Positions 4,440-56,418 of a stretch of DNA of 64,000 nucleotides are shown piece after piece. The translations under genes were made by a program, and so were the position numbers. Position 1 is the stretch's first letter, and each line of letters opens with the position of its first letter. Source of the DNA: Mytilus californianus (lineage: Eukaryota); NCBI RefSeq assembly GCF_021869535.1, contig NW_026262734.1, positions 52,948,001 through 53,012,000 on the forward strand, read 5' to 3'. The notes beneath the pieces were generated by a model, which did no database searches, was not told the origin of the DNA, and saw only the letters and a list, made by a program, of their open reading frames with translations.

Positions 4440-5244
4440 TTCCCTGAAATACAGAACATAGTTTTATGATAAATTACAAACCTGCTCGTGCATTTTTCAT
4501 TGTTATTCAACGCAAAATAATTATCTAAGATACTTGGGACGATCTCATTTCACAAAGGATTTCTATTGTCTACTTATTGTACCTCAAACTTAAATACCCG
4601 GTGTAGGTCTTTAAGTTGATGTTCAATTTACTAAAAGTTAATCGGGTATGACTAATTAGATACGCCTTCTTAAATCAGGGGGTCCGAAATAGGATCGGGT
4701 AATAACACCCAGCAAAATACCATAATTTACAATTTTAGAAAATTTTTGATTCAAAGTGCTTTTGGTTGCTTTAATATCTCCATTCAATAATCAAGCAGTG
4801 GAAATACTAACCTGTCCTAAACCGAGAGATGTTGGCTGCAATAGGAATTTATTTACATAAAAAAGTCCATATCTCATTTACTTATAGTGGTCGTTATTGT
4901 TTGTAAATTCATGACGTTTTGTTTTTTTGGTATTCGTCTACCGTGGAAAAAAAAGAGGGAAGGAGGGCAATAGCTTAGCTTACGACTTCGATCATGATTT
5001 AACTGTATTCTATTACGGCATAAGTTTTACTTCTAGCGAACGCTCTGCCTTATTGTAAAAATTGCCACTTTAAAATTGTAATCATTTGCCTCAGATTGAT
5101 CCACTTTGCATCTCGTCGTAAATATGCATGACATATTTGCCACTGAACATAAAAGGAGCAATTAATTAAACAGCTTCATTTAGTGACGTATAATCATTTG
5201 GTTTCAGTAAATAATCGTCACCCAAGGGTGACTGGGGAATAGAA

Positions 5245-5650
5245 ATATGGTCACTTGGTCTTTTTCCGACCGGCAGTAAAACGCTTGCCAAAGTGGGGCG
5301 TCCGTTTGGCTGTGCGGGATGTATCAAGTTTGCAGCCACGTCCGGTCAGATTGGGGACGTTAAATCCGATGCCTCTTGTACAGAAAGTGCCATGCTCTTT
5401 GCACGTTAAGAACCCTTGCAACAACTCTTTGAGGGGTCCGTAGGTGGCCTGTTGCAAGGCAAACTTTCTGTCCCTATCCAATATATTCTCATTGTCCAGT
5501 GGCAGTCCAAATTTCCCCGACCATCATCCCAGATGGCCTCTATTATTACATACATACCTATTGTATTTATTGGTAACTTGTTTTCGTCCTGAACATTCAT
5601 GAAATATTTGTCACTGGACGTTAAGCAACCAACAATCAATAAATCAATAA
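5245..5650 (+). mobile_element. SINE-like interspersed repeat (Deu/Nin-like core, shared bivalve SINE 3' tail)
   Basis: GC-richer island with GCACGTTAAGAACCC-type core, ending in GAAATATTTGTCACTGGACGTTAAGCAACCAACAATCAAT. The same tail recurs near 56945. Family recognised from memory only. Confidence 0.6.
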
Positions 5651-6819: not shown

Positions 6820-7030
6820 GATGATAATGGATGACGACCAGCGATAAATAAAAAGAATATTCAGGACGATAACATGTAAATACAATATGAGTATTAACCC
6901 CGCTTTTAACTAGACTGACACGCTGAGTCGGTGTTTTTACACGTAAGTTCCCAAGATATTAGTTCGCACGAAGAAAAGTCACCCGACCCGGACACATTTC
7001 CGACTCTGAGCCGACCAGTCTGTGCTCCTA
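6820..7030 (-). mobile_element. 3' half of a tRNA-derived SINE (Meta/MESC-like core) interrupted by the Mutator element
   Basis: Minus strand reads AGCACAGACTGGTCGGCTCAGAGTCGGAAATGTGTCCG...CTCAGCGTGTCAGTCTAGTTAAAAGCGG...CGTCCTGAATAT, continuing the SINE head found at 56410-56555. Confidence 0.72.
7022..7030 (+). repeat. Left 9-bp target site duplication GTGCTCCTA
   Basis: Identical 9-mer at 56410-56418, each immediately outside a TIR. Confidence 0.93.
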
Positions 7031-7073
7031 GCACAAGGATAATAGTTACGCTGAACGGTGCCCACTGGTCACC
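7031..7073 (+). repeat. Left terminal inverted repeat (43 bp)
   Basis: GCACAAGGATAATAGTTACGCTGAACGGTGCCCACTGGTCACC; reverse complement of 56367-56409 with one mismatch at position 2. Confidence 0.95.
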
Positions 7074-34300: not shown

Positions 34301-37300
34301 AAATTTTTCAATCAAACCTAAGTAGCGATTTTAAAGCTATCGATAACAAGTTGTAAGTTTAAATAGAAATTTAGTTTCAGTATCATATAGACGTAATGAA
34401 CCTATCCATCATACTAAAAAAATGATAAAATAAATACAAACCACTTTCATCTTCATTTTCTGTTGACTTCTGAAAAAAGAAGTTAAATATTAAATAATCG
34501 TATAGGAAATCAACTGATTTATCCAAAGGATCTAATGAAGATACGTATAAATTGACTTCGTTATCGGCTCTTGACAACGCAAGCAAATTCAATTATTTTT
34601 AAGATTTATTTCTAAATGATCATGGAAGATAATGTACATTTTTTCTGTTCAGTGTTACTTAGATAGTAAATATAATGTTATAGTATTCTATATTTTGAAC
34701 CAATGATATATACAAACCTGTTCTTCTTTTTTCACCCTCTTCAAATTTCTCACATTTTCTACAAATGATAAAAAAAACTCAACATTTAAAAAAGAAATTG
34801 TGGTATTATTGCCAATGAGACAACTGTTCACAACAAACCAAATGACACAGAAATTAACAAGTATAAGTCACTGTACGGCCTTCAACAATGAGCAACGTCC
34901 ATACCGCATAGTCAGTTATTAAAGGCCCGGAAATAAGAAATGTAAAATAATTCAAACGATCATACATCTAAGACTACATATGACCAATTTTTGTAAAATT
35001 TAATGACCAGTGAATAACAAAATCCGAAATCTGAAAAAGGTGTCAACTGTCAAGAGAATTCCAATAACAACAGAAAGTGACCAAAGATAACTAAATACAG
35101 TATCTGCTTCAGGTGATCAGTGTTAACACAATTCTATATCATTTTAAGGTTGCTTAGGGTACTCAAATACCATATCTGGGAAAGTTGACCATATGCAGCC
35201 AATTAAATATACCAAAAATAATTAATTTCAATCAAACCGAAGAAGCCATTTTACAGCTATCGATAACAAGTTTTAAGTTCAAAAAGAATAATAGTTGCAG
35301 CATTATATAAACATAGTGTATGTTTTCATCATATTAAAGGTTTGATACAATAAATTAAATGCATACATACCACTTTCATCTACATTTTCTGAGGACTTCT
35401 AAAAAAAAGAAGATAAACATCTGATATTTGTATTAGTAAATTCAATTTTATTTATCCATAATTATCTTATGAGGTTAAGTAAAAATTGACAACATTTTCA
35501 ACTGTCAATGCTCTTGGCAATGTTTGCAAGGTCAATGATTTTCAAAGATTTGTTCTTTAAAAGATCAGGATAGACAATGATCATTCTGTTGAGTGCTATT
35601 AATATTTTAAATGTAATATGCAATACAATTCTATAGCCTTGCTGAACCAGTAATGCATATTAACCTTTTCTTGTTCTTTTTTTCCTCTCTTCGATTGTCT
35701 TACGTTTCCTACAAATGATAAAAAACATAACATGACTTATGTTTTGATGACCAAAGGTAACAAAATCCAATATTTACATAGGGTGACCAGAGGTCACCAA
35801 ATCCAATATTTACATAAGGTGACCAGAGGTCACCAAATCTAATATTAACATTAGGTGACCAGAAGTCACCAAATCCAGTATTTACATAAGATGAACTGAG
35901 GTCACCAAATCCAATATATGAATAAGGTGACTAGAAGTTACTCCATTCTAGCATATTAAGGCAAACAGAGGTTAACAAATCCAAACTGGTTAAGATGACC
36001 ACATGTAATCAACTTAAATATTTGTGAAAGGTAATCAAGAAACAAAAAAAATGATTAGTTCAATCGAGCCTAAGTGGCCATTTTACCAGAAACGATTGCA
36101 AGTTTCAAGTTCAAAAAGAATAATAGTTGCAGCATTATATAAATATAGTGTATGTTTCCATCATATTAAAAGTTTGATACAATGAATTAAATGCATACAT
36201 ACCACTCTCATCTACATTTTCTGAGGACTTCTGAAAAAAAGAAGATAAGTATATGATAATTGTATTAGTAAATTCAATTTTATTTATCCAAAAGTATCTT
36301 ATGAGGATCAGTTTTATTTTATTTAATTATCAACTGTCCGTGCTCTTGGCAATGTTTGAAAGATCAATGATTTTTCTTTAATTTGTTTGTAGATGATCAT
36401 GAAAGATAATGATCATTGTGTTAAGTTTTATCGGTACATTAAACTTAATGTAATAATATTCTATATTCTTGTTGAATCCATAATGTATATCAAACCTGTT
36501 CTTCTTCTTTTTTGTCTTTCTTTGATTGTCTCAAATTTTCTACAAATGATATGAAAAACATCAACTAGTTGTATGCAAATGTTATTTACCAGAGATAACC
36601 AAATCTGAAAACTGCATAAGGTGACCAGAGGTAACCAAATCCAATATTAACATAAGGTGACCAGAGGTCACCAAATCCTATATTTCCATAAGATGACCAG
36701 AGGTAACCAAATCCAATATATGAATAAGGTGACTAGAAGTTACCCCATTCTAGCATATTAAGGCCAACAGAAGTTAACAAATCCCATTTCTGGCTAAGAT
36801 GACCACATGATATCAACTTAAATATTTGTGTAAGGTAATCAAGAAACAAAAAAAATGATTAGTTCAATCGAGCCTAAGTGGCCATTTTACCAGAAACGAT
36901 TGCAAGTTTCAAGTTCAAAAAGAATAATAGTTGCAGCTTTATATAAGTATAGTGTATATTTCCATCATATTAAAAGTTTGATACAATGAATTAAATGCAT
37001 ACATACCACTCTCATCTACATTTTCTGAGGACTTCTGAAAAAAGAAGATAAATATATGATAATTGTATAAGTAAATTCAATTTTATTTATCCAAAAGTAT
37101 CTTATGAGGATCAGTTTTATTTTATTTACTTATCAACTGTCCGTGCTCTTGGCAATGTTTGAAAGATCAATGATTTTTCTTTAATTTGTTTGTAGATGAT
37201 CATGAAAGATAATGATCATTGTGTAAAGTTTTATCGGTACATTAAAGTTAATGTAATAATATTCTATATTCTTGTTGAATCCATAATGTATATCAAACCT

Positions 37301-40300
37301 GTTCCTCTTCTTTTTTGTCTTTCTTTGATTGTCTCAAATTTTCTACAAATGATATGAAAAACATCAACTAGTTGTATGCAAATGTTATTTACCAGAGATA
37401 ACCAAATCTGAAAACTACATAAGGTGACCAGAGGTAACCAAATCCAATATTAACATAAGATGACCAGAGGTCACCAAATCCTATATTTCCATAAGATGAC
37501 CAGAGGTAACCAAATCCAATATATGAATAAGGTGACTAGAAGTTACCCCATTCCAGCATATTAAGGCCAACAGAAGTTAACAAATCCCATTTCTGGCTAA
37601 GATGACCACATGATATCAACTTAAATATTTGTGTAAGGTAATCAAGAAACAAAAAAAATTATTAGTTCAATCGAGCCTAAGTGGCCATTTTACCAGAAAC
37701 GATTGCAAGTTTCAAGTTCAAAAAGAATAATAGTTGCAGCATTATATAAATATTGTGTATGTTTCCATCATATTAAAAGTTTGATACAATGAATTAAATG
37801 CATACATACCACTCTCATCTACATTTTCTGAGGACTTCTGAAAAAAGAAGATAAGTATATGATAATTGTATTAGTAAATTCAATTTTATTTATCCAAAAG
37901 TATCTTATGAGGATCAGTTTTATTTTATTTAATTATCAACTGTCCGTGCTCTTGGCAATGTTTGAAAGATCAATGATTTTTTTTCTTAAATTTGTTTGTA
38001 GATGATCATGAAAGATAATGATCATTGTGTAAAGTTTTATCGGTACATTAAACTTAATGTAATAATATTCTATATTCTTGTTGAATCCATAATGTATATC
38101 AAACCTGTTCTTCTTCTTTTTTGTCTTTCTTTGATTGTCTCAAATTTTCTACAAATGATATGAAAAACATCAACTAGTTGTATGCAAATGTTATTTACCA
38201 GAGATAACCAAATCTGAAAACTACATAAGGTGACCAGAGGTAACCAAATCCAATATTAACATAAGGTGACCAGAGGTCACCAAATCCTATATTTCCATAA
38301 GATGACCAGAGGTAACCAAATCCAATATATGAATAAGGTGACTAGAAGTTACCCCATTCTAGCATATTAAGGCCAACAGAAGTTAACAAATCCCATTTCT
38401 GGCTAAGATGACCACATGATATCAACTTAAATATTTGTGTAAGGTAATCAAGAAAAAAAAAATGATTAGTTCAATCGAGCCTAAGTGGCCATTGTACCAG
38501 AAACGATTGCAAGTTGTAAGTTCAAAAAGAATAATAGTTGCAGCATTATATAAATATTGTGTATGTTTCCATCATATTAAAAGTTTGATACAATGAATTA
38601 AATGCATACATACCACTCTCATCTACATTTTCTGAGGACTTCTGAAAAAAGAAGATAAGTATATGATAATTGTATTAGTAAATTCAATTTTATTTATCCA
38701 AAAGTATCTTATGAGGATCAGTTTTATTTTATTTAATTATCAACTGTCCGTGCTCTTGGCAATGTTTGAAAGATCAATGATTTTTCTTAAATTTGTTTGT
38801 AGATGATCATGAAAGATAATGATCATTGTGTAAAGTTTTATCGGTACATTAAACTTAATGTAATAATATTCTATATTCTTGTTGAATCCATAATGTATAT
38901 CAAACCTGTTCTTCTTCTTTTTTGTCTTTCTTTGATTGTCTCAAATTTTCTACAAATGATATGAAAAACATGTACTAGTTGTATGCAAATGTTATTTACC
39001 AGAGATAACCAAATCTGAAAACTGCATAAGGTGACCAGAGGTAACCAAATCCAATATTAACATAAGGTGACCAGAGGTCACCAAATCCTATATTTCCATA
39101 AGATGACCAGAGGTAACCAAATCCAATATATGAATAAGGTGACTAGAAGTTACCCCATTCCAGCATATTAAGGCCAACAGAAGTTAACAAATCCCATTTC
39201 TGGCTAAGATGACCACATGATATCAACTTAAATATTTGTGTAAGGTAATCAAGAAACAAAAAAAAATATTAGTTCAATCGAGCCTAAGTGGCCATTTTAC
39301 CAGAAACGATTGCAAGTTTCAAGTTCAAAAAGAATAATAGTTGCAGCATTATATAAATATTGTGTATGTTTCCATCATATTAAAAGTTTGATACAATGAA
39401 TTAAATGCATACATACCACTCTCATCTACATTTTCTGAGGACTTCTGAAAAAAGAAGATAAGTATATGATAATTGTATTAGTAAATTCAATTTTATTTAT
39501 CCAAAAGTATCTTATGAGGATCAGTTTTATTTTATTTAATTATCAACTGTCCGTGCTCTTGGCAATGTTTGAAAGATCAATGATTTTTCTTAAATTTGTT
39601 TGTAGATGATCATGAAAGATAATGATCATTGTGTAAAGTTTTATCGGTACATTAAACTTAATGTAATAATATTCTATATTCTTGTTGAATCCATAATGTA
39701 TATCAAACCTGTTCTTCTTCTTTTTTGTCTTTCTTTGATTGTCTCAAATTTTCTACAAATGATATGAAAAACATCAACTAGTTGTATGCAAATGTTATTT
39801 ACCAGAGATAACCAAATCTGAAAACTACATAAGGTGACCAGAGGTAACCAAATCCAATATTAACATAAGGTGACCAGAGGTCACCAAATCCTATATTTCC
39901 ATAAGATGACCAGAGGTAACCAAATCCAATATATGAATAAGGTGACTAGAAGTTACCCCATTCTAGCATATTAAGGCCAACAGAAGTTAACAAATCCCAT
40001 TTCTGGCTAAGATGACCACATGATATCAACTTAAACATTTGTGTAAGGTAATCAAGAAACAAAACAAATGATTAGTTCAATCGAGCCTAAGTGGCCATTG
40101 TACCAGAAACGATTGCAAGTTGTAAGTTCAAAAAGAATAATAGTTGCAGCATTATATAAATATTGTGTATGTTTCCATCATATTAAAAGTTTGATACAAT
40201 GAATTAAATGCATACATACCACTCTCATCTACATTTTCTGAGGACTTCTGAAAAAAGAAGATAAGTATATGATAATTGTATTAGTAAATTCAATTTTATT

Positions 40301-43300
40301 TATCCAAAAGTATCTTATGAGGATCAGTTTTATTTTATTTAATTATCAACTGTCCGTGCTCTTGGCAATGTTTGAAAGATCAATGATTTTTCTTAAATTT
40401 GTTTGTAGATGATCATGAAAGATAATGATCATTGTGTAAAGTTTTATCGGTACATTAAACTTAATGTAATAATATTCTATATTCTTGTTGAATCCATAAT
40501 GTATATCAAACCTGTTCTTCTTCTTTTTTGTCTTTCTTTGATTGTCTCAAATTTTCTACAAATGATATGAAAAACATCAACTAGTTGTATGCAAATGTTA
40601 TTTACCAGAGATAACCAAATCTGAAAACTACATAAGGTGACCAGAGGTAACCAAATCCAATATTAACATAAGGTGACCAGAGGTCACCAAATCCTATATT
40701 TCCATAAGATGACCAGAGGTAACCAAATCCAATATATGAATAAGGTGACTAGAAGTTACCCCATTCTAGCATATTAAGGCCAACAGAAGTTAACAAATCC
40801 CATTTCTGGCTAAGATGACCACATGATATCAACTTAAATATTTGTGTAAGGTAATCAAGAAACAAAAAAAATGATTAGTTCAATCGAGCCTAAGTGGCCA
40901 TTTTACCAGAAACGATTGCAAGTTTCAAGTTCAAAAAGAATAATAGTTGCAGCATTATATAAATATAGTGTATGTTTTCATCATATTAAAGGTTTGATAC
41001 AATAAATTAAATGCATACATACCACTCTGATCTACATTTTCTGAGGACTTCTGAAAAAAGAAGATAAACATATGATAATTGTATTAGTAAATTCAATTTT
41101 ATTTATCCAAAAGTGTCTTATGAGGATCAGTTTTATTTTATTTAATTATCAACTGTCAGTGTTCTTGGCAATGTTTTAAAGATCAATGACTTTTCTTAAA
41201 TTTGTTTGTAGATGAGCATGAAAGATAATGATCATTGTGTAAAGTTTTATCAATATATTAAACTTAATAAAATAATATTCTATATTCTTGTTGAATCCAT
41301 AATGTATATCAAACCTGTTCTTCTTCTTTTTTGTCTTTCTTTGATTGTCTCAAATTTTCTACAAATGATATGAAAAACATCAACTAGTTGTATGCAAATG
41401 TTATTTACCAGAGATAACCAAATCTGAAAACTACATAAGGTGACCAGAGGTAACCAAATCCAATATTAACATAAGGTGACCAGAGGTCACCAAATCCAAT
41501 ATTAACATAAGGTGACCAGAGGTAACCAAATCCAATATATGAATAAGGTGACTAGAAGTTACCCCATTCTAGCATATTAAGGCCAACAGAAGTTAACAAA
41601 TCCCATTTCTGGCTAAGATGACCACATGATATCAACTTAAATATTTGTGTAAGGTAATCAAGAAACAAAAAAAATTATTAGTTCAATCGAGCCTAAGTGG
41701 CCATTTTACCAGAAACGATTGCAAGTTGTAAGTTCAAAAAGAATAATAGTTGCAGCATTATACAAACATAATGTATGTTTCCATCATATTAAAAGTTTGA
41801 TACAATAAATTAAATGCATACATACCACTCTGATCTACATTTTCTGAGGACTCCTGAAAAAAGAAGATAAGCATATGATAATTGTATTAGTAAATTCAAT
41901 TTTATTTATCCAAAAATATCTAATGAGGATCAGTATTATTTTTATTTAATTATCAACTGTCAGTGTTTTTGGCAATGTTTGAAAGATCAATGATTTTTCT
42001 TAAATTTGTTTGTAGATGATCATGAAAGATAATGATCAATGTGTAAAGTTTATCGGTATATTAAACTTAATGTAATAATATTCTATATTCTTGTTGAATC
42101 CATAATGCATATCAAACCTGTTCTTCTTCTTTTTTGTCTTTCTTTGATTGTCTAAAACTTTCTACAAATGAAATGAAAAACATCAACTAGTTGTATGTAA
42201 ATGTTAATTACCAGAGATAACCAAATCTAAAATATGCATATGGTGACCAGAGGTAACCGAATCCAATATTAACATAAGGTGACCAGAGGTCACCAAATCT
42301 GAAATCTGCATTAGGTGACCAGAGGTAACCAAATCCAGTATTTCCATAAGGTGACCAGAGATAACCAAATCTAATATATGAATAAGGTGACCAGAGGTAA
42401 CCAAACCCGTTATTAACATAAGGTGACCAGAGGTCACCAAATCCAATATATGAATAAGGTGACCAGAAGTAACCCCGTTGTAGTAAGGCAAACAGAGGTT
42501 AACAGATCTAATTTCTGGTAAAAATGACCACATGTAATCAAAATTAAATATTTGTGTAAGGTAATCAAGAAACAAAAAATGATTTTTTCAACTAAGCCTA
42601 AGTGGCCATTACCAGAAACGATTGCAAGTTTTAAGTTCAAAAAGAATATTAGTTGCAGCATTATATGAACTTTGTGTACATATCTATCATATTAAAGGTT
42701 TAATACAATAAATTAAATGCATACAAACCACTCTCAAGGTGACCACAAGTATTCAGATGCAATATCGCGGTAAGGTGAGCAGAGGTAACAAAACCTAATA
42801 TTTACATTATGTGACAAGAGCTAGCAAATCCAATAAATACATATGGTGACCAGAGGTAACCAAATCCAATATCAGCATAGGTGACTAGATGAACGTATTC
42901 CAATATTTACATAAGTTGACCTGAAGTAACCAAATCCGTTATCTTCATTAGGTGACAAGAGGTTACCAAATCAATTATCTGCATAAGGTACACAGAGGTA
43001 ACCAAATCCTATATATGCGTAAGATGACCAGATGTAACCAAATCCTATATGCGGAAGGTGACCAGTGGTAACAATTCAAATATTTGCAGAAGGTAACCAG
43101 AGTTAACCGAATACTATTTTAGCATAAGTTGACCAGATGTAACAAAAGCCGCTATTTGCATAAACTAACAGAGGTAATCAAATCCAATAATTGCATAGGT
43201 TGACCAGAGGTAATACAATACTTTTTTGCATAAGATAACCAGAGGTAACCAAATTCAATATTTGCATTAGTTGATCAGAGTTAACCGAATCCAATATTAA

Positions 43301-44720
43301 CATAAGGTGACCAGAGGTCACCAAATCTGAAATCTGCATTAGGTGACCAGAGGTAACCAAATCCAGTATTTCCATAAGGTGACCAGAGATAACCAAATCT
43401 AATATATGAATAAGGTGACCAGAGGTAACCAAACCCGTTATTAACATAAGGTGACCAGAGGTCACCAAATCCAATATATGAATAAGGTGACCAGAAGTAT
43501 TCCCGTTGTAGTAAGGCAAACAGAGGTTAACAGATCTAATTTCTGGTAAAAATGACCACATGTAATCAAAATTAAATATTTGTGTAAGGTAATCAAGAAA
43601 CAAAAAATGATTTGTTCAACTAAGCCTAAGTGGCCATTACCAGAAACGATTGCAAGTTTTAAGTTCAAAAAGAATATTAGTTGCAGCATTATATGAACTT
43701 TGTGTACATATCTATCATATTAAAGGTTTAATACAATAAATTAAATGCATACAAACCACTCTCAAGGTGACCACAAGTATTCAGATGCAATATCGCGGTA
43801 AGGTGAGCAGAGGTAACAAAACCTAATATTTACATTATGTGACAAGAGCTAGCAAATCCAATAAATACATATGGTGACCAGAGGTAACCAAATCCAATAT
43901 CAGCATAGGTGACTAGATGAACGTATTCCAATATTTACATAAGTTGACCTGAAGTAACCAAATCCGTTATCTTCATTAGGTGACAAGAGGTTACCAAATC
44001 AATTATCTGCATAAGGTACACAGAGGTAACCAAATCCTATATATGCGTAAGATGACCAGATGTAACCAAATCCTATATGCGGAAGGTGACCAGTGGTAAC
44101 AATTCAAATATTTGCAGAAGGTAACCAGAGTTAACCGAATACTATTTTAGCATAAGTTGACCAGATGTAACAAAAGCCGCTATTTGCATAAACTAACAGA
44201 GGTAATCAAATCCAATAATTGCATAGGTTGACCAGAGGTAATACAATACTTTTTTGCATAAGATAACCAGAGGTAACCAAATTCAATATTTGCATTAGTT
44301 GATCAGAGTTAACAAAATCTGAAATCTGCATAAGGTATTATCCATCATATTAATTGATTTAATCAACAAATTAAATGCATACATACCATTCTCATCTAAA
44401 ATTTGTATGGACTTCTGAAAAAAGAAGATAAAAATATAATAATTGTATAAGGAAATCAATTGATTTATTCAGAAGTATCAAGTGAGAACAAGCATAAATT
44501 GACCCGATTTTTAATTGTGAATGTTCTTGACAATTTTTGCAAGTTCGTTCATTTTTTTTAGATGATCAGGAAGAAAATTCGATGGTAAAGTGTTTTCAAT
44601 GAATAAACATTTAAAATGTTATGCAACAATCATCTGTAGTCTTGATGAACCAATTATAGATATCAAACCTGTTGTTGTTCTTTTTTTCCTCTCTTTGAAT
44701 GTCTAACTTTTTCTAAAAAA
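31330..44720 (-). repeat. Right internal satellite: ~803-bp higher-order tandem repeat, each unit with a cluster of inverted 36-bp motifs plus AT-rich unique DNA
   Basis: Marker TTAAATGCATACATACC at 36187, 36991, 37794, 38598, 39401, 40204, 41007 and 41810 (803-804 bp spacing). More diverged copies lie at about 31499, 32496, 33287, 35355, 42713, 43741 and 44371. The 36-mer core is GGTGACCAGAGGTAACC. Confidence 0.95.
34790..34960 (+). mobile_element. High-copy mussel-type non-autonomous repeat nested in the right satellite
   Basis: TTGCCAATGAGACAACTG...AAATGACACAGAAATTAACAA...GTACGGCCTTCAACAATGAGC; same family as 21665-21780. Confidence 0.6.
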
Positions 44721-45792
44721 AAGAATAAACAAAATCCATGAAGAGAAACTAAAGGTTAATATTTTTAAAGTCAGTACAATTCAGAGTAAAAATATATACT
44801 CAAATTATTAAATTGCAATATAAAAAAAGGGTAACCTCTCTGTCAAGTATAGATTACCTTGAACAACACGAACCATTTAGTGCTTTTAAATAAGTGTGGG
44901 TGAAACATAAAAAAATTAATAGCTTAACGTGAACTTACTTCTAGCGAAAACTGTGTGAATTATATATATTCATAGGAATTAATTCAGAAGCATGCTTTAT
45001 TATTTTTTCTGCATGCATTTATGTTTATCTATCATTGATTATAATGTAATGTAAAATTGATACAGGATAGAAATGAAGTTGTGATAAAGATACATGACTT
45101 CACAGCAGAGATAATAAATAAGGAAATTGTAATTATTGTGTCAAGCAGAACATTAAGTGAGAACTATAATATGTAAAAGTAGTGGCATATTGACTACACA
45201 TTGATTATATTTGAAGCGTACAGATTTAGGATAAAGCACACCAAACTAAAAGTTCACAGTATTTTATACATTACCATACATCTGTATATAAGAAACAAAA
45301 AAATAAATAAAATCCAACAGCTTATACAATGCAAACAAGAAACTGACAAGTTATATAACAAAATCATTTGAAAAGACAATATTTAAAGAAGACTTGAAAA
45401 GTAGTGTGCACTAAGCAAACGGTACCTATGCCAGCGTCATTCTGTATTAATCAACTAAGTCATGAGGGGGAACATTAAACGTCTGCCTTTACCATGTGAG
45501 TCTGAATGTGAGAACAACAAATCTTTGGATTTCAAAGATATCTTAGAATAAGTTCATTTAGTGCAATCTATAAAAAATGTAAGAAATATCAACATGAATA
45601 TATCTACAAAAATTAATAAGTCGACTTCTGTTATGAAATTAAACGCAACTTATAGAATTATTGAACAAATGGAAGAACAATGATCATTCTACAATTTTGT
45701 TATATCGCATTTTGTCCTTGCAAATTAAATTCTATTTCATTGTATTACTTTAAAAAAAAAATAGAAATGGTAGAATTTTCTATTGCACTCAC

Positions 45793-46175
45793 CAGGTGGA
45801 AAAATTGAGCACAAACTGCATAGTCCTGGAGTCATACACTTTTTGTGGAAATTCCTTTTACAGCATGAACATGCTCTCTGCAATATTTAATAGACATGTT
45901 CAAATTCTATGAATTAATGTAGTTATTGCGAAAAATGTTAATATTAGTGAAAGTTCATCAAATTGATATAAAAAAAAACATTTATATTCTAACCTACAAT
46001 ATCACAAGGTTCTGTTAAAAAATTATCAATTTTAACCATAAAACGTATTTAAATAAGCAATAAAAATAATAAAGCACCCTGTTAAGTTGAACATCAACGA
46101 TCTATAAATGTATATTTACCATGTTAGTTGGTTCTTTAGCACACAAGAAGCATGTCATAACAGCACCTTTTGTTT
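45793..46175 (-). CDS. PHD finger (C4HC3) encoded by two exons
   Basis: TCFLCAKEPTNM|RACSCCKRNFHKKCMTPGLCSLC; strong GTAAAT and GTGAGT donors. Confidence 0.8.
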
Positions 46176-49100
46176 CTATAGTAAAATAGAAATAGATGTT
46201 AACATGAATTAGGAACAACATTCTTCTGCTCCAAATCACAAATTGCAGCAGCTGATAATAAGTCATAAAATTGAAAATGTTTACACTTGGTTGATGTTAT
46301 TTTTTACGTTCCTTCCCGTAGATGGTAATTATGATGGTGATGCTCATTGATGACAGCGGCAGTTTATATGAAGAAGACAATCGCATAAATATATCGGCTA
46401 ACTTAATTAGACCTACAAAAACTAGTTGATTTTTAAACATCTACTTTCCATGTTTATATTTTCATTAATAAGATCGTAATATTTGACAACAACACATTAT
46501 CATACATATATAAGACATGGAATATCATAAAAATAAGTACAGTTTGAGCTGTAGAAAAAAGAGAGAAATTATTACAGAAAACAACCGGAATTATTAAGCT
46601 ATTATTTCCAAACTACATTTTTAAGTATAACATATCAATAATGAATAATACATTAAAGAAACATAAATACATCATTTATAGCGTAAAGAAATTTGGTCAG
46701 AAACAATAGATAAAATTAAAAACAAATCATCAATGAATTGAGATAAACATCAAAGAAAAGGATTTCAAACACATTATTGAACATGTTAAAATTCATATTC
46801 CCTTTTTATTAGATTCACTTATTGTCTAGCAAGAAGATATTAAGTATTTACATAACATACGGTACTATTAGTAAATGCTTTTATTCTATTGATTACTTAC
46901 GCACAGCTTGAACAATTTCACTGCCAATTGTGAATCTTTCAGCTAGGACGTTTAATTCCAAAGATGTATCTGTCTTACTTAGGTATCGGTCGAGGAACTA
47001 AAAAAATAATTCTTAAATGTACACATTGTTTTGTAAATTTTCTATGGCCTGTTCAAAACTGAATGTTTAAATTACTGAAATGATTCATGTAGGCCTAATA
47101 ATGATATAAAAATGTTTTTTTTACAAAAGGTAAATTAAAAGTACCACATATTTATTTGTTTTTCTTTCCATTACATTTAAAGTAATTTATGCAAATCATA
47201 GATTTGGTTAAATTTCACACAACCTTTGTGCTTTGCGGATTTTACTGAAATAGTTTACATGATATATATTCCAAGTTATTGTTTACACATATTTAAATAA
47301 ACAGGTTTGGGAAACAAGTTGTTTACAACTTACAACAATATTTTGTTCATCTTGTTTGTACGATTCTGCCTTTTTTTCAAAATCAACAAGGGTGTCTTTT
47401 ACGTGCAAAATTGTGATCTTTATTAGTATATATATATATCATTGATTTAAGATTCAAGCTTCAATTGAACTTTCATTTATTAACTCTCAATTCATACATG
47501 CAAAGCCCAATGTTTTATGTACCTTCAAACAATAAACACCACATGAGCTAAAATCATTTTGCAGAGGATACCCAACTGCTGTACAGATTGTCCATGTACC
47601 AAGATCTCTGCTTTTAGTGAAGTAGCTACATAATATAATATGAAAAGAAAAATGTGTTACTTAAAATTGATATATATTAAAAAGTCAAGCTGGCTATAGC
47701 CATAATGCCAGCCATTGCCTTACCCCGGACTGTATCATAGAACTTACATGTCTAGCTAGATGTATGATACTTAAGGAGATATTGCACATTCCATAGAAAA
47801 CCGTTCATTTGACCAACCTTTCTAATGTAGGAAAAAAAATATTTGCAGCTGTTTTAAAGTTGATATCAACAACGTTTGGAAAAAAATAACTGGTCTTCAG
47901 TTCTTACTGCTATATTCAATTTACAAAGCTGTGCAATCAATAATACAATTATAGTTCAATTCCAGTATCAACCAGAAGTAATTTTCATTTTAGATTAACA
48001 AATTATATTTCTCTAGATTTGTCCTTATAACTTGTGACTCACTTCTGAAAATTTCAGAATTATAAACCTTTTTTTAAGTATATATATCAAACACAGAAAT
48101 AAAAATTTACTTTGAAACAAATCACATGCATTAAAGCAATAAACGACTGTCATGTAACTACAGTTTCAATCTTACTTGAAATTCTTTTCATATGTTCTCA
48201 ATTTCTTTGATATTTTGAGCGGGTCCATACTTGTCACAATATGGTGTTGGACATCCATAACCTGAAACAAAAATTATTCTCTCTTTTTAATTTCACATAC
48301 TTAAATCTGTTTACATTAACATTTATAAAAAAATAAATATTTTGCTTAATTACTGGTTGTTGCTCAATGTTCAGAAGCAAATATTTGATAATATTCTATA
48401 CGAAGAAGCCAATATTTTATATCTGATATTTCTTTTCTAACTATCATTTCCATGCAGTATAAATGCTTTCATATAAATGAGTGCAATATCAGTTGGAAAA
48501 ATGTATGAGAAAATATATATATTAAGTCAAGTAAGTTGAATTAAGTTATAGAAGAACAACTAACATGACTAAAAACTCAACGAAATGTCTGAAATGCTGT
48601 TCTTGCAACTCATTTTTCTATTAACTTATAACCTCATGGAAAAATGCCTGAATAGTGTAATTAATAACATTAATTGAGCAAATAAACCTACCACAGCAAC
48701 CCAATGACACTTCCCGTCATTAATGCACCCAATGACAGTGTCATACTGTTGTATATCGTCCTAAAAAAGTATTGTAAAATGTTATTATTAACTTGCAAAC
48801 TGATAAAAAAAAAGACCGATGAAACATTAAATACATTTTATAAACAGCAATATAATACCATACACAATACAATATTTAGCATATTGTTTTATTATTTATC
48901 ATTTGATAATTTACATATATCATCAATATGTTAGAATGTCTTATTATTTTGTTAAAACGTGAAAGGCGAATTGGTAATATCCAGCTTTTAGCTGTAAAAA
49001 GAGTAATCTATGTGTAAATCAAAAGCACTTATATAAAAAGAGTTTATAACAGATGATTATATAGTATTATACCTTTTTAAACCAAGTTACGCTTTTCCTC

Positions 49101-52100
49101 CCTTCAAAAATTGAGGTCAGAATCAGACAATCTGCACGGGACACTTTCTGGAAAACGGAAATATGTATAAAACAAATTGTGTGACAAGAACATTGGATTT
49201 ATTTAACTGTTTCTATTACATCGGAACGTGAAATTATATAAGGTTTTTCTTGCCTGGTTCAATACTTCTTCAAAGTCAGTATGAAATTACCCATCAAAAA
49301 TACGAGGAATAAAAGTAAATTCATTTTTCTCATAGTTAATGAGTTGTGCATATATTTCCTTAACGACAATTCCAAATGGGATATAACTCTTATAAGGAAT
49401 ATCCAGATAGCTTCGGTTAAATAATATATGACATCATAAGGGTGTAACGGGTAATTGAGTAAACTAATAAAAGATCGCAGTAGATGTATCTACACGCAAA
49501 ATCGAGATTGGGGAGGTAACTCTATTAATGAGAGTAAAAAGTCTTCGTTAGGGCAATGGCGAAAGCTCATAAGCTGTACGATATCATATAAAACAAAGTC
49601 AAAGCTATATCTGTTAAAAATAATAGCTCAACTTAAAAAAGGCGAACAAAATATAAATAATAATATCAAAATAATGATAATAATTATAATCCTTAAGTAA
49701 AGCTAAAAGTCTTTCAACCGAAAGGTAGAAAGACCTTAAATTATATAAAAGGGAAAAAATAAAAGATGATTTAGTGGAACAAATTTTTCATTCTCTGCAA
49801 AAAGGGTGGTGGGTGCGAAAGTAACTTTTACAATACACAGTTTACTTTGGTGAAATTGAAAATGAATAAAAAATGCATAAAACAAGTTTAGAATGATAAT
49901 TCAGATACCCTTAATGGAGGAATGGATCATGTAGAAAAAGCGAAATTAAATGAATTGATCCTGGAAGTTACAAAAAAATAAGCATGCTTTAAAGTAGCCG
50001 ATGAAAAAATCAGTCAACTCTAAAATAAATGCACTGAAATATGATAAAACGGTTATTAAATAAATACTTTTAATTCGTTTACCTGTACACACTGATCCGT
50101 CCGTTTTTGCAGTACACTACAATAAAGATTAATTATCTGAAAAAAAAAAGAAAATGATAAGGTCAGATCTTTTCAATCAGTATGATACAAAGGAAACCAT
50201 CAACAAAACTAAATATCACAAAGGTGAAGACATACAAGTTTGATCAAGATAACACATAACATAAAGTACCATGATTATGTTATCAGTTTAAGACAGATTA
50301 TTTAAAAAAATCCTTGTACATTTTATAGAACTAAATAAAATCAAAAGACCTCCAAAAACCTGAATGACTTACCTGCATTTTTTTTGTTGTTAAATCTTTC
50401 ATCAATGATTATTTCTGCTTTTCAATGGAAATAAAGTAGTGCTTACATTGTCAAATTGGTATTTAATTTTTTTTGGTATCTGTCATATTTTCTTCAATGG
50501 CAAAACAATGCATTTTAAACCAATATGCTATTAAGCCATAGTGACTATATTTCTTGGCATAAAAGAAAACACAATTACTTTCAGGCCAGTAACTCTTTAA
50601 GGGGTCACAAAAATTAGCAATTTAGTGGCATCAACCAAACAATGGGTAGTTTTATTTGTCTGAAAATGCTTTACCTAATGAACCTTTTCACCAATGTCAG
50701 ATTTAATTTTATTTTAGATACCCTAAGGATGATTAAGCTTACGTTTGGTTGGAATTGGTTCAGTAGTTTCAGAGGAGAGTTCAAGATCTTTGAAAACGTT
50801 TAACCTTTATTACATAAATTAAACCATTAGTACTGTTACCTGATCATTCAACTCCTCCTCAATTTTTAAGCTCATTAAATCCGATACGTAAAGAACATTC
50901 CCATACACCGTACCAAACTTTTCGTCAGCATTTCCTTTCCATGAATTCCATATAGTTTCCAAAAATGCTTTAAATAAATAATCATTTTTAACAATCAAAG
51001 TAATACAAATAATAATACCTGAAACAAATGACATCAATTAAGTTTCTTTTAAATTTTGGAATTCTACGAAAACAGAAGTGCAATCTTGTTTAGCACAGAA
51101 GATCACAATATTTGGGTAGGGTGACCAGAAGTAGCCGCAGTCAATATTATATAAACAATAGGTGCCATATTATTTAAGTCTATAACCGTTTAAATTGCAA
51201 AGAGGTAATAAAGGTTTACAAGTTACAGAATGACATGAGGTAATTAATATCAACATATGTGTAGGGTTAGCAGAGTAAGTCAGAAACTATGTAGGGTGAC
51301 CAGAGGTCAACCAAAGTCACTATCAGTGAAGGGCGACAAGATGTAACCAGTCAATATATTTGTAAGGTAAGCGAATGTTAACTAAGACAATATGCGTAGG
51401 GTGACCAGATTTAATCAAAGAATATATATCTGTTTAAATGTCGCAGAGCTAGCCAAAGTTCATAACTTTGTCACCTGACTAAAGTTAACTAAAATCAATA
51501 TATGTGTAAGATGACCACAGGTTACAAAAGTCAATTACTATGTAAGGTGACCAAATGTAGAGAAAGTCAATAAATGGGAAGGGGTGACCAGAGGGCACCA
51601 GTCCATAAATCTGTAGGGGACAAATGTAACCCAAATCTGTATATGTGTGAACTGCCTACAAGTTAACAAGTTTGATAATTGTGCGGGGGTAACTCAGGTC
51701 AATAACTTAGTAGGAAAAAAGGTTATAAAGTCATTTTATGTGAAGGGTGACCAGAGGCAACCTAAGCCAATATATGAGTAGGGTGACCAGAGATAACCGA
51801 AGTTAATATCTGTGTTAGGTGACCAGAGGTAACCAAAGTTAATATATGTGAAAGGTGACCAGAGGGCACCAGTCAATAAATCTCTATGGCGACCAGATGT
51901 AATCTTTAATCAAAATCTATATCTATGTAAACTGCCGACAGCAAACGAAAGACAATATCTGTCACGTGTATGGCGTTAGGAAGTAACCAGTTTCAATATA
52001 TATGAAGGGTGACCAAAGGTAACCATTGTTTAATCTGGAAGATATGATTTTAGTATGCACACAATTACTGCACAGAGTTTGGTAATTTTAATTTTCCAAC

Positions 52101-54909
52101 GAAAGAAAGAGGTAGGGCCAATATGCCGAGGATTTTTTTTCACAGAAGGGCCAATTTCAAAAAGTGCCGACAGAATAAAATTTACTATAAAAACAAAAAA
52201 TAAAAATGCTTTTTGATCAATATCTCGATTTACATATAGTATGATATGTGTGATCAATAGTTAATTTAACCCTAAAAAATGATGAAAATCCAATATCCGG
52301 ATTTTCGGGTGTTTTTATGTGGAAAAAACAGGGAATCCCCCAAGAAGGACATTTCAAACCAAAAAAAAGTTATGCTTTTTATGACTGTTGTTATACATAC
52401 TACTTTTTACTTCAAAAATGAAATTGGTTTAGTGTGTCCTTATTACATAAAAAACAACTTTTTAAAGAAAAAATTGTAACATCGATAAATTGTACCGATA
52501 TACCTTCTAAATAAGAGTCATAATGATCAGAATCGCCGTAGCTCCACCATTAGAGCACAGAACTACTAATAAATGATGAATTTGAAGAAAGGGTTCGAAC
52601 CTCGCTCAGAACTTTTGCATTTTTTTGTGTTGTTATATTAAATTTTAAAGTTTCTATCATATTTTTTCGGATGTTTGCTTGACTCATAGAGTCATTCTGG
52701 TTCATTTTGACTATTCAGTTAGTTTACTAGTATATAATTTTACGTGTATCAAAGAAAAATAATGTATCGCTTATTGTGTGCAATCCTATGACTGTCCATA
52801 CTCTTGAATTACTTTCTATTCATGTGTTTACATTATTACGTATTTCCAAGGGACAACTGCCGTCAAATTGATGTAGGTGCCTGTACATAACCAATAACAC
52901 GAGAATTAATTCTATAGAAATTAAGCCTACATGTTGCGGGTGTAATATACACATAACTTAAAATAAGGCCATTGTATACAAGTTTCATAACAACAAAAAA
53001 CAATTCGTCGAAACCTTTTTTGAACATGGTATTATATGTAACAAATGCAGTCAACAACAATTTTGTCGCCAAATCACAAACTGTAAAGATACTAGTACTG
53101 AAATTTTTACCACCTTCTATACACGGGTACCTAACTCATCAGAAAAATAAAACAACATAACAGAACAAATCAATTACACTACAAATCGCGATTGTAGGTA
53201 AAACATCAAGAAGCTGTTGCATCTGTATCACAACGAAGGGCCGATTTGTTAAAATTACAGAAAAGGCAATAAAACATGAAGTAGTAACACAGGGTGATCT
53301 ATGACCAACTGATGTAAGATGTTCTCCGGTTTTAATTTTATATACATGTACATGTATTTTCTTGTCTTATCTTATAGACGATAAAACCTTAAAAGACCAG
53401 GACAAATACAGATATACATATTCAAAATGAGAAAATCACGATTTGAATTAGTTCGATATTATTTGGCTCCTTGACAATTTACATGGTATGGCACCTCGCA
53501 TAAAGGATGTTAATAATAAAATAAAATCAATATTAAAAAAACAATAGTCTTGGCCTTGTTTTTGTAGGAATACCTGTTCAAGGTATGAAAATAAATAATG
53601 TGACGTATTTTCTTGTACTATAATTAGCATCTATCGGGCTATTTAAAACATTATTTACCTATCTTATCGAATGAAACAAATCTCCGGCAAATTGGCCCTC
53701 CCTCTTTATTTTTTTGGATTCCTAGCAATTTTATGTTATGGTTTACGTCTACTTTGAAATTTAATTGTAATTTTATTTATTTCATATCGGTTCAGAATAA
53801 GATTCTCTTATTGGATAAAAAGGGGTAATATGACATTCATTATTTTTCAGTAATAAATTCCATCCTTCATTAACAGAACAAAACGGACCAGAAAACTGGT
53901 CGTTAACGAACTTTTACATGAGAATGACAGGTGGGCGTGGTTTCCGTCTGATAATGACCGTTGAGGCGTGGTTTCTCTGTAAATGACCGTTGGGGCGTGG
54001 TTTCTCTGTTAATGACCAATGGGGCGTGGTTTCTCTGTTTAGAGAGATTTATCCATTTTTAAAACATGTTCCTTTCTTTAATATTATATTTAATTTGTTG
54101 AATTGTTTATTATTTGTTTTTGTTAATAATAAAATTAAAGAGAACTTGATTAAGTATTTATATACTGAAAAATTGCACTAAAATGAATGGGAGTATTCCT
54201 ACAACTGGTCTTCACTCTCTGCCATACAAATCAACTACTCGAGTTCGCTTTAGGCATTTTGAATTAATGAAAATTTTCAAAACATAGTTCCTCAATGAAA
54301 TAAACATAATAGTTCTTCAAAAAAGACTGGTCATTATCGTGATACATGGACTGCCCGTAGGACAGTAATATTGACTATGACAGCGATAATGACCTCGCCT
54401 TCGCGTCATTATCGCTACCTTAGTCAATACCACTGTCCTGTGAGCGGTCCAACTATTATATAAATATTAAATCCTGAATTAAAAGGATTAAGTCGATTAG
54501 AATGTGACCTTACTCTTAATACTGTTCAATGGCATTTTAATATAATTACACCAACTATATATAGCTAACAACATTACAAATGTCTACATTCATAAATACA
54601 TATAAATATGTTACTGGTTGAGTTGACAAATAAAACTGTAAGATCAGCATAACATCAGAAGAAACCTTCTCAAGCTCAAGAGATAAATCATTGAAAAATA
54701 TTATTAAAAGTAAATGTCATAATATGGAACCTTCTGGTACTCTTGATCAAACCTCTAAAGTAGGTAAATCCCTAACTTTGTATTGTGTAACTTTTGTCTT
54801 TCGTTTGTAAGGTGGCACTAGATCAATAGCATTTCCTTTCTTCTTGAAGATAAATATAGAATTGATTTAAAAACTTACCTTTACTTCTTTCTTTTATGAC
54901 AGCTAACAT
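45793..54909 (-). CDS. Ulp1/SENP-family (peptidase C48) cysteine protease plus PHD finger; intact reading frame
   Basis: Exons 54879-54909 (ATG, tentative), 50840-50967, 50083-50136, 49073-49147, 48692-48760, 48176-48261, 47523-47625, 46901-46997, 46120-46175 and 45793-45877 are GT-AG, phase-compatible and stop-free. Motifs: SDLMSL..EELNDQIINLY, VTWFKKDDIQQYDTVIGCINDGKCHWVAVVMD (His, Asp), YPLQNDFSSCGVYCLKF (Gln, Cys). The 3' end is either 45554-45567 (DCTK*) or the 29.4-31.3 kb exons. Confidence 0.86.
51110..52030 (-). repeat. Block of inverted 36-bp satellite motifs in the first coding intron of the Ulp1-PHD gene
   Basis: Repeated AGGGTGACCAGAGGTAACCAAAGTTAATAT; spacer subtype is the reverse complement of that at 21870-22560. 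Confidence 0.8.
53923..54039 (+). repeat. Four copies of a 29-30 bp unit containing a GC-box-like GGGCGTGG
   Basis: AATGACCGTTGGGGCGTGGTTTCTCTGTT-type units starting at 53923, 53953, 53982 and 54011. Confidence 0.85.
54347..54451. repeat. Imperfect palindromic hairpin repeat with a CTCGCCTTCG centre
   Basis: GGAC..GGACAGTAATATTGACTA..GCGATAATGAC-loop-GTCATTATCGC..TAGTCAATACCACTGTCC..GTCC. Confidence 0.7.
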
Positions 54910-54996
54910 TATCCTTAAAAAATATTAAAATACAGTTCATCCATTGCTTAAGTTATCTTAACATTATCAATATCATCAACTACATGTATAAGATTA

Positions 54997-55997: not shown

Positions 55998-56366
55998 TTA
56001 GTGAATTATTTATTTTGTGAATTTTTTTTATATCTACTTCTACTTAGAGTCTTAGGGTGAATATATCCTTCTAGTCTGTGATTCGAACATTTAAAAAAAA
56101 CGTGTCATCACAAATGACAAATCATGCAAAATGGATGAAACAATCATTTTGCTTTGAATGACTTAATTAAACTTAATATGCTTAAGTTTGTGTTATTCAT
56201 TGTATTCAATTGCTCGGTATGTTAATTTTACTTACAGATAATACAGACGGTGACAGGCTCTATGGTGTATTGCTAAATAGAAAGATGAATTGTCTATTTT
56301 AAGCTTTCTATTTTTAGACATGTGTTAGAACTACAATATTACTACACACAAGAGCACTATTTATAG

Positions 56367-56409
56367 GGTGACCAGTGGGCACCGTTCAGCGTAACTATTA
56401 TCCTTGTCC
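56367..56409 (-). repeat. Right terminal inverted repeat (43 bp)
   Basis: GGTGACCAGTGGGCACCGTTCAGCGTAACTATTATCCTTGTCC. Confidence 0.95.
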
Positions 56410-56418
56410 GTGCTCCTA
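56410..56418 (+). repeat. Right 9-bp target site duplication GTGCTCCTA
   Basis: Identical to 7022-7030. Confidence 0.93.

What the first reader, a model, noticed from the sequence alone, without database searches (positions are those of the whole stretch)
45793..54909. Intact Ulp1/SENP-like protease-PHD gene invisible to the ORF track
Seen: ten short exons splice in phase with no stops and rebuild a C48 fold with His (CHW), Asp (VMD), Gln (LQND) and Cys (SSCG), followed by a C4HC3 finger. Only one exon shows up in the supplied ORF list. It stays intact while the transposase is broken. Inference: it may still be functional, either acting in trans for the family or useful to the host.
Basis: partly seen in the sequence, partly recalled or inferred. 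Interest (0 to 1): 0.8.

Follow-up and report, generated by a model that had tools for sequence, protein, structure and literature searches.

The report
Transposon-borne Ulp1-type protease gene, intact
The hidden multi-exon gene is real, spliced and intact, but it is the ordinary second gene of a very young 49-kb Mutator-type jumping gene in a mussel. Its intactness reflects youth, not selection or use to the host.

Summary
Observation confirmed and extended. RNA-assembly contigs from two organism labels carry the nine junctions (GT-AG, minus strand).

The true gene is longer: 13 exons. The start codon is probably at 56321, 88 nt inside the right terminal inverted repeat (TIR) and just after a TATA box. 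A 7-nt micro-exon and a last exon supply the stop. The product is 293 aa.

A 99.1%-identical RefSeq proxy scores Peptidase_C48 at E=8.8e-12. His145, Asp162, Gln200 and Cys206 align with the SENP1 active site. The catalytic Asp is the one in MDPL, not VMD. One of the two SENP clamp tryptophans is Glu here. The C4HC3 finger looks like a PHD finger but stays below the Pfam threshold.

The gene lies inside a Mutator-like element at 7031-56409 (43-bp TIRs, 9-bp target site duplication), convergent with an OTU-transposase gene. An oyster relative has the same layout.

Five copies differ by about 0.23% each, and exons diverge as fast as introns (9 non-synonymous to 3 synonymous changes). An intact frame is therefore expected by chance (about 0.89). 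The RNA contigs carry the consensus letter at this copy's four private sites.

Ulp1(+PHD) in Mutator elements is already published, and this scan had noted the same family on other DNA (s1-330625, s1-282002). No break in the transposase was found.

The parts
56367..56409 (-). Right terminal inverted repeat (43 bp) of the 49.4-kb Mutator-like element. The 9-bp target site duplication GTGCTCCTA lies at 56410-56418 and 7022-7030.
   Evidence: 42/43 match to the left TIR at 7031-7073, with a perfect 9-bp duplication; the same TIR bounds four other copies, each with different flanks.
56358..56365 (-). TATAAATA box directly after the TIR. Candidate promoter of the protease gene (inferred).
   Evidence: The transcription start was not mapped.
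56236..56321 (-). Exon 1, with the probable start codon ATG at 56321-56319. Encodes residues 1-29, including a basic KNRKLK stretch.
   Evidence: RefSeq models P0001 and P0019 start here and splice to 54913. The donor is CT|gtaagt.
54879..54913 (-). Exon 2.
   Evidence: The loose end of RNA contig X20 matches 54884-54913 exactly. Acceptor aag|GATA and donor AAAG|gtaagt.
50840..50967 (-). Exon 3, the start of the C48 domain. It ends in E-E-L-N-D-Q. Glu79 (50854-50852) stands where SENP1 has the clamp Trp. The private change D48N is at 50947.
50083..50136 (-). Exon 4. An alternative acceptor at 50116 gives a frameshifted isoform, seen in RefSeq model P0001.
49073..49147 (-). Exon 5.
48692..48760 (-). 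Exon 6, with catalytic His145 (48706-48704) followed by Trp146.
48176..48261 (-). Exon 7, with catalytic Asp162 (48225-48223) in the motif SMDPL. The private change I160S is at 48230.
47523..47625 (-). Exon 8, with oxyanion Gln200 (47561-47559) and catalytic Cys206 (47543-47541).
46901..46997 (-). Exon 9, the end of the C48 domain. The private change Q230L is at 46945.
46120..46175 (-). Exon 10, with zinc ligands Cys253 and Cys256.
45793..45877 (-). Exon 11, with zinc ligands Cys266, Cys269, His274, Cys277, Cys283 and Cys286. A private synonymous change is at 45814.
45275..45281 (-). Exon 12, a 7-nt micro-exon ATGTATG (cag|..|gtaatg). It supplies Asp292, Val293 and the first two letters of the stop codon.
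   Evidence: Both RNA contigs carry these 7 letters between 45793 and the last exon.
44603..44712 (-). Exon 13 (last). It completes the TGA stop, and the rest is 3' untranslated region. The RNA contig extends to about 44603; the poly(A) site was not mapped.

Best explanation
This is the accessory (second) gene of a very young, 49.4-kb autonomous Mutator-like transposon (7031-56409) in the California mussel genome.

Shown:
- The gene reads inward from the right end of the element, convergent with the OTU-transposase gene that reads in from the left end.
- Its mRNA is spliced from 13 exons.
- It encodes a 293-aa protein: a complete clan-CE C48 cysteine protease core (His145, Asp162, Gln200, Cys206) followed by a compact C4HC3, PHD-like zinc finger.

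Inferred:
- The protein removes a ubiquitin-like modifier from chromatin-bound proteins. SUMO is the best guess, because SENP1 is the closest solved relative.
- The finger would bring it to histone tails.
- It would act in trans for all copies of the family, either by relieving SUMO-dependent silencing or by helping the transposition and repair step.

The family keeps the gene: an oyster relative has the same layout and the same active site. Individual copies, this one included, drift neutrally after insertion. The open frame here is explained by youth.
For: - Element boundaries: 43-bp TIRs and a perfect 9-bp target site duplication.
- Splicing: nine junctions are carried by RNA contigs from two organism labels. 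The 5' exon comes from RefSeq models. The 293-aa frame is intact.
- Protease identity: the RefSeq proxy P0017 is 99.1% identical to residues 72-291 and scores Peptidase_C48 at E=8.8e-12, 45.8 bits against a cutoff of 20.7. SENP1 is the best solved relative (E=1.2e-5) with His, Asp, Gln and Cys aligned.
- Oyster relative: transcript-derived P0013 (264 aa) is 47.5% identical and collinear through the finger. It scores C48 at E=3.9e-15.
- Conserved layout: the oyster locus L002 has the transposase SWIM/C-terminal exons on the opposite strand about 6 kb downstream. Intron positions are shared with M. edulis and oyster loci.
- Wider family: the Atlas lists nine clusters that share the Peptidase_C48 plus PHD family set; the three shown are 234-267 aa, from Chordata and Cnidaria.
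- Copies: five copies have the same TIR and different flanks, with a star-like pattern of private changes.
- Literature: a Ulp1 domain, aligned together with a PHD, is reported in Mutator transposons of hydra, lancelet and plants (PMC2836005). SUMO is needed for piRNA-guided transposon silencing in flies (titles and abstracts).
Against: - No biochemical evidence exists for any substrate.
- The Trp that precedes LND in SENP1 is Glu79 here and Glu in oyster. SUMO specificity is therefore not assured.
- The finger is below the Pfam PHD threshold (17.7 against 24 bits). The oyster finger hits no family.
- Only 5 residues separate ligands 6 and 7.
- Structure prediction failed (pLDDT 37.8).
- A raw RNA run of the same species showed no reads on the exons in the 6% of the run that was sampled.
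- The RNA contigs show the consensus letter, not this copy's, at the private sites the table lists, so this copy may be silent.
- The transcription start was not mapped. The X20 contig has more 5' sequence than the TIR-to-ATG distance allows.
Confidence: 0.8

Rival explanations
1. This particular copy is a dead passenger. It is not transcribed, or its product is impaired by its private changes, and only other copies supply the protein.
For: RNA contig X15 differs from the window by one letter in each of the four exons that hold this copy's private sites. At 50947 and 46945 the table shows the consensus letter. I160S replaces a conserved hydrophobic residue two positions before the catalytic Asp; oyster also has Ile there. 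The right TIR has a private change at position 2. Post-insertion evolution is neutral.
Against: The frame, the splice sites, the TATA box and the catalytic residues are all intact. Assembly contigs collapse near-identical copies, so absence of this copy's letters does not prove silence.
Confidence: 0.35
2. It is a domesticated or host-beneficial SENP-like gene that merely lies within old transposon remains.
For: The frame is intact and the mRNA is spliced.
Against: It lies inside an element with intact TIRs and target site duplication. At least five copies at about 99.5% identity sit at different loci, each starting 88 nt from the TIR. There is no excess of synonymous changes. One copy has a premature stop. 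Similarity to SENP1 is only distant.
Confidence: 0.03
3. It is a processing protease for the element's own products, comparable to adenovirus and Polinton clan-CE proteases. For example, it might release the transposase from its OTU-bearing N-terminus, rather than remove a modifier from chromatin proteins.
For: The oyster relative also passes the Peptidase_C5 (adenovirus endoprotease) threshold, 24.2 against 21.3 bits. One SENP clamp Trp is missing. The transposase gene carries extra N-terminal domains.
Against: The best matches are SENP1 and Ulp1. The mussel proxy is below the C5 threshold (18.5 bits). No cleavage motif was looked for or found. The PHD-like finger points to chromatin.
Confidence: 0.07

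Closest known systems
Ulp1 (and PHD) domains carried by Mutator/MuDR-type transposons of hydra, lancelet, Arabidopsis (KI-MULEs), maize, rice and melon (Bao, Kapitonov and Jurka 2010, PMC2836005, and references there)
   Same: A C48 domain, in some cases followed by a PHD finger, encoded inside a Mutator-superfamily element. The role proposed there is in transposition, DNA repair or the ubiquitin pathway.
   Different: That paper's figure legend aligns the domains as parts of 'Mutator TPases'. Here the protease is a separate, small, 13-exon gene read from the opposite end of the element. The transposase carries an OTU domain as well. The host is a bivalve. The MULE survey PMC6446971 lists mollusc groups with one ORF only.
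mudrB of maize MuDR (from my own knowledge, not tested here)
   Same: A second gene transcribed convergently to the transposase gene from the other terminal repeat.
   Different: I know of no sequence relationship between mudrB and C48 proteases, and did not compare them here.
Ginger1 transposases with C-terminal Ulp1, Ulp1+PHD or OTU domains (PMC2836005)
   Same: The same accessory domains (Ulp1, PHD, OTU) associated with a cut-and-paste transposon in invertebrates.
   Different: Ginger1 has an integrase-type transposase and carries either OTU or Ulp1, never both, fused to the transposase. This element has both, in two genes.
SENP1 / yeast Ulp1 (host SUMO proteases)
   Same: The catalytic His, Asp (+17), Gln and Cys, the LND and HW motifs, and the collinear C48 core all match.
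   Different: The match to SENP1 is only distant (E=1.2e-5). The Trp before LND is Glu. There is no long N-terminal targeting region. There is a C-terminal zinc finger instead.

Membership tests
Peptidase C48 (Ulp1/SENP; Pfam PF02902) | Profile match above the curated threshold | tested here: met
   P0017, which is 99.1% identical to window residues 72-291, scores 45.8 bits (E=8.8e-12, cutoff 20.7) over profile positions 3-207 of 217. Single window exons alone are below threshold (E=0.19). The joined window peptide itself had no reference and was not submitted.
Peptidase C48 (Ulp1/SENP; Pfam PF02902) | Catalytic His-Asp-Cys triad with the oxyanion Gln, in SENP-like spacing | tested here: met
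   His145, Asp162 (+17), Gln200 and Cys206 align with the HW, YYDS and QQ..DCG motifs of SENP1.
Peptidase C48 (Ulp1/SENP; Pfam PF02902) | Pair of tryptophans that clamp the Gly-Gly tail of SUMO. The role of these residues is from my own knowledge of the Ulp1/SENP structures. | tested here: not met
   Trp146 after the His is present. The Trp before LND in SENP1 aligns with Glu79 here, and oyster also has Glu.
Peptidase C48 (Ulp1/SENP; Pfam PF02902) | Clan-CE fold | tested here: inconclusive
   AlphaFold2 on a 7-sequence alignment gave pLDDT 37.8, so the model is unusable and no fold search was run.
Peptidase C48 (Ulp1/SENP; Pfam PF02902) | Isopeptidase activity on SUMO or another ubiquitin-like modifier | not testable with these tools
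   Needs an enzyme assay.
PHD finger (Pfam PF00628) | C4HC3 ligand pattern | tested here: met
   C253-x2-C256-x9-C266-x2-C269-x4-H274-x2-C277-x5-C283-x2-C286. The pattern is conserved in oyster P0013.
PHD finger (Pfam PF00628) | Profile match above the curated threshold | tested here: not met
   17.7 bits (E=0.0038) against a cutoff of 24, covering profile positions 1-31 of 47 only. The oyster finger hits no family. The best PDB hits are nearly all PHD fingers, but none has E below 0.02. Related Atlas clusters have PHD hits in 49-66% of members.
PHD finger (Pfam PF00628) | Long loop between ligands 6 and 7 (canonical 12 or more residues, from my own knowledge) | tested here: not met
   5 residues in mussel and 6 in oyster.
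Autonomous Mutator-like element (MULE) | Terminal inverted repeats with a 9-11 bp target site duplication | tested here: met
   43-bp TIRs (42/43 match) and the 9-bp duplication GTGCTCCTA.
Autonomous Mutator-like element (MULE) | MULE DDE transposase with a SWIM finger | tested here: inconclusive
   A single exon scores PF10551 at 26.9 bits against a cutoff of 27.6 (E=6.6e-6). The RefSeq product at the matching place of copy L003 has PF10551 and PF21056 hits. D, D, E and CxC..CxH motifs are seen in open exons. The full coding sequence was not rebuilt.
Autonomous Mutator-like element (MULE) | Several copies at different loci | tested here: met
   The window plus L001, L003, L004 and L005 share the same TIR and have different flanking 9-mers. 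Identity between copies is about 99.5%.
Domesticated (host) transposon-derived gene | Purifying selection on the copy, and a locus free of transposon ends | tested here: not met
   9 non-synonymous to 3 synonymous private changes. The exon rate is 0.28% against 0.23% for non-coding DNA. The gene lies within intact TIRs.

The most novel reading that the evidence does not exclude
The Ulp1-PHD-like protein is a transposon-encoded anti-silencing factor. The finger would dock it on histone tails at the element. The protease would strip SUMO (or another ubiquitin-like modifier) from the heterochromatin and piRNA effector proteins that need that modification to silence transposons. The OTU domain on the transposase would do the same for ubiquitin. 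This would be an animal counterpart of plant MULE anti-silencing genes. A skippable 7-nt micro-exon would switch the C-terminus between ...PPDV and a basic KRGKKEQQQV tail.
Probability: 0.2. Interest if true: 0.75.

Novelty: new member of a known kind. Interest (0 to 1): 0.3.

Why it matters
It gives a clean, RNA-supported gene model for the accessory protease of an active-looking giant Mutator element in a bivalve. The model includes a 7-nt micro-exon that carries the stop codon. It also shows that the two-gene layout (OTU-transposase plus Ulp1-PHD-like protease) is shared with oysters. This makes the old, untested idea that transposons tamper with SUMO and ubiquitin marks testable with a defined consensus protein. 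It does not reveal a new kind of system.

Tried and rejected
1. Pfam on single exon-bearing stretches was too weak. The best was C48 at E=0.19.
2. I did not type the joined peptide into any tool, because it has no reference. I used RefSeq proteins of sister copies (P0017, P0018, P0019) as proxies and compared them with the joined peptide in scripts.
3. The exhaustive protein search with the longest exon found only fragments and partial models. One hit, P0011, is unrelated.
4. AlphaFold2 on the 7-row alignment failed (pLDDT 37.8). No fold search was run, and the second structure job was not used because no deeper alignment could be built.
5. A viral-contig scan with the family alignment found no relative.
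6. The raw RNA run X22 had no reads on the exons, only on repeats at 47.37-47.41 kb and 50.35-50.95 kb.
7. The last exon was first missed by a 30-nt pattern search, because a 7-nt micro-exon intervenes. This was solved.
8. The reading as a host or domesticated gene is rejected.
10. I tried to test the claim that the transposase is broken. I found only that all recognisable exons are open here and that copy L003, not the window, lost the E-motif exon.
Full report
**What is there**

The window is AT-rich animal DNA. Protein hits and sister copies place it in Mytilus californianus (assembly GCA_021869535.1).

On the minus strand, nine short exons between 51.0 and 45.8 kb join in phase without stops, all with GT-AG borders. 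They encode a protein with the motifs ..LNDQ....CHW....MDPL....LQNDFSSCG.. and a C4HC3 cysteine pattern.

**RNA evidence**

31-mer searches found runs that hold 5-10% of the words of the 5.3-kb stretch. That is roughly what spliced exons alone would give.

I laid four runs on 45150-51120. One 875-nt contig (X15, organism A, depth 22) and one 1156-nt contig (X20, organism E, depth 26) skip exactly the eight predicted introns, each with CT..AC on the + strand.

- Upstream, X20's loose end matches 54884-54913 exactly.
- Downstream, both contigs continue past 45793. The extra letters are a 7-nt micro-exon ATGTATG at 45281-45275, with perfect acceptor and donor, followed by an exon beginning at 44712. 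The TGA stop spans that junction, so the protein ends ..PPDV.
- RefSeq models of sister copies (P0001, P0019) add a first exon, 56321-56236, whose ATG opens the same frame 30 codons earlier.

The full model has 13 exons and 293 aa and is intact in the window.

The ATG lies 88 nt inside the element's end. A TATAAATA box (56365-56358) directly follows the 43-bp terminal repeat. The transcription start itself is not mapped. X20's contig has more 5' sequence than that distance allows, which I could not resolve.

**What the protein is**

The joined peptide has no reference, so I used RefSeq proteins of sister copies as proxies:
- P0017 is 99.1% identical to residues 72-291.
- P0019 is 98.9% identical to residues 1-177.

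P0017 scores Peptidase_C48 at E=8.8e-12, 45.8 bits against a cutoff of 20.7, over nearly the whole profile. SENP1 is the best solved relative (E=1.2e-5). His145-Trp146, Asp162, Gln200 and Cys206 align with the SENP1 active-site motifs.

The catalytic Asp is therefore the one in MDPL, 17 residues after the His.

One difference from SENP/Ulp1 stands out. The Trp before LND in SENP1 is Glu79 here, and oyster also has Glu. SUMO specificity is therefore a guess.

The finger is C-x2-C-x9-C-x2-C-x4-H-x2-C-x5-C-x2-C. It gives a sub-threshold PHD hit, 17.7 against 24 bits. Its best PDB matches are almost all PHD fingers, but none is significant. The loop between ligands 6 and 7 is very short. The Atlas search lists nine clusters with the Peptidase_C48 plus PHD family set; the three shown are 234-267 aa, from chordates and cnidarians, and 49-66% of their members pass the PHD model. 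I call the finger PHD-like. Structure prediction failed (pLDDT 37.8).

**Context**

- The positions 7031 and 56409 are the ends of a 49,379-bp element: 43-bp terminal inverted repeats (42/43 match) and a perfect 9-bp target site duplication, GTGCTCCTA.
- 36-bp satellite arrays lie inside both ends.
- On the + strand there are open exons with OTU motifs (15.4-16.5 kb), MULE D/D/E motifs (23.2-25.7 kb) and a SWIM finger with a long tail (26.5-27.8 kb).
- The protease gene is thus the second, convergent gene of a Mutator-like element.
- An oyster relative (P0013, 264 aa, transcript-derived) is 47.5% identical and collinear through the finger.
- At the oyster locus L002, the transposase SWIM and C-terminal exons lie on the opposite strand about 6 kb downstream.
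- Intron positions are shared with M. edulis and oyster loci.

The gene is therefore an old, integral part of this transposon lineage, not a recent capture.

**Is intactness meaningful?**

Four further copies (L001, L003, L004, L005; three chromosomes) start with the same TIR and have different flanks. In a five-way alignment, 133 of 134 variable columns are singletons, which is a star-like burst.

| Measure | Value |
|---|---|
| Private divergence, exons | 0.28% |
| Private divergence, non-coding | 0.23% |
| Private coding changes | 9 non-synonymous, 3 synonymous |
| Test against the neutral 80:20 expectation | p=0.72 |
| Simulated chance that the 882-nt frame is still open at 0.23% divergence | 0.89 |

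Copy L003 already has a stop at codon 71. So the open frame is what youth predicts.

The window copy has three private amino-acid changes (D48N, I160S, Q230L) and one private synonymous change. Contig X15 differs from the window by one letter in each of the four exons that hold these sites. At 50947 and 46945, the two sites the table lists, it shows the consensus letter. Expression is therefore shown for the family, not for this copy.

**The transposase**

I found no break in its recognisable exons. Copy L003, not the window, lacks 480 bp that include the E-motif exon.

**Mechanism**

Shown:
- a gene next to the TIR, convergent with the transposase gene, and spliced;
- a complete C48 active site;
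- a layout conserved in oyster.

Inferred: a ubiquitin-like-modifier isopeptidase brought to chromatin by the finger and acting in trans for the family. It would either relieve SUMO-dependent silencing or assist transposition and repair. For the first, the dependence of piRNA-guided silencing on SUMO in flies is described in the papers listed. The second was proposed in PMC2836005.

**Comparison and novelty**

Ulp1 domains, aligned together with a PHD, are already reported in Mutator transposons of hydra, lancelet and plants, and in Ginger1 transposases (PMC2836005). Surveys of MULEs and of bivalve transposons do not mention such a gene in molluscs.

This scan had already noted the same family on other DNA of this genome (s1-330625) and this same two-gene system (s1-282002).

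I rate it a new member of a known kind. The modest new points are:
- a separate 13-exon gene rather than a fused domain;
- OTU and Ulp1 both present in one element;
- a stop-bearing micro-exon;
- conservation of the layout between mussel and oyster.

Noticed in passing
window 45275-45281 and 44600-44712: The stop codon is built across a 7-nt micro-exon. Skipping the micro-exon would extend the protein to 307 aa with a basic tail ending KRGKKEQQQV. RefSeq model P0018 of a sister copy skips it and chains repeated last-exon-like pieces into a long acidic/basic tail.
   Followed up: partly
window 35200-42500: About nine tandem units of roughly 803 bp lie between the two genes. Each holds a short 36-bp mini-array. 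RefSeq predicts same-strand 'genes' of 297-505 aa in the matching region of sister copies. These are probably artefacts of the repeats.
   Followed up: no
window 45780-51030 against coded sequencing runs: DNA runs labelled as other organisms (B, C, E, F and 'mollusc metagenome') hold 47-85% of the 31-mers of this stretch, introns included. That implies only about 0.5-2.4% divergence. The transcript of organism E shows 7 differing letters in the eight exon pieces listed (about 750 nt), and by count about three of them lie outside this copy's private sites. If these labels are different species, the element is unusually similar between them, which could mean horizontal transfer or very recent shared activity. 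The labels are coded and could not be resolved.
   Followed up: partly
window 50350-50950 and 47373-47408: Very high RNA and contig depth (up to about 2700) with loose ends on both sides, inside introns of the gene. These are pieces of abundant repeats or other transcripts, not of this gene.
   Followed up: no
window 50116: An alternative acceptor 20 nt inside exon 4 gives a frameshifted, truncated product. It is annotated as RefSeq protein P0001 on a sister copy.
   Followed up: partly
L001:7355-7776, at the place matching window ~51981; window 5221-5648: Sister copy L001 carries a 437-bp insertion in intron 2. The insertion is 88.6% identical to a repeat lying outside the element in the window. 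It looks like a small mobile element that landed after the copy was made.
   Followed up: no
L003, at the place matching window 25348-25827: Sister copy L003 lacks 480 bp that include the transposase exon with the third catalytic (E) motif. It also has a stop at codon 71 of the protease gene. That copy is dead in both genes.
   Followed up: partly
window 56408: The right TIR of this copy reads GG at positions 1-2. Its own left TIR and four sister copies read GC. This is a private change in the terminal repeat.
   Followed up: no
window 53933-54039 and 51737-51865: A 29-bp tandem repeat and a short array of the element's 36-bp satellite lie inside intron 2 of the protease gene.
   Followed up: no
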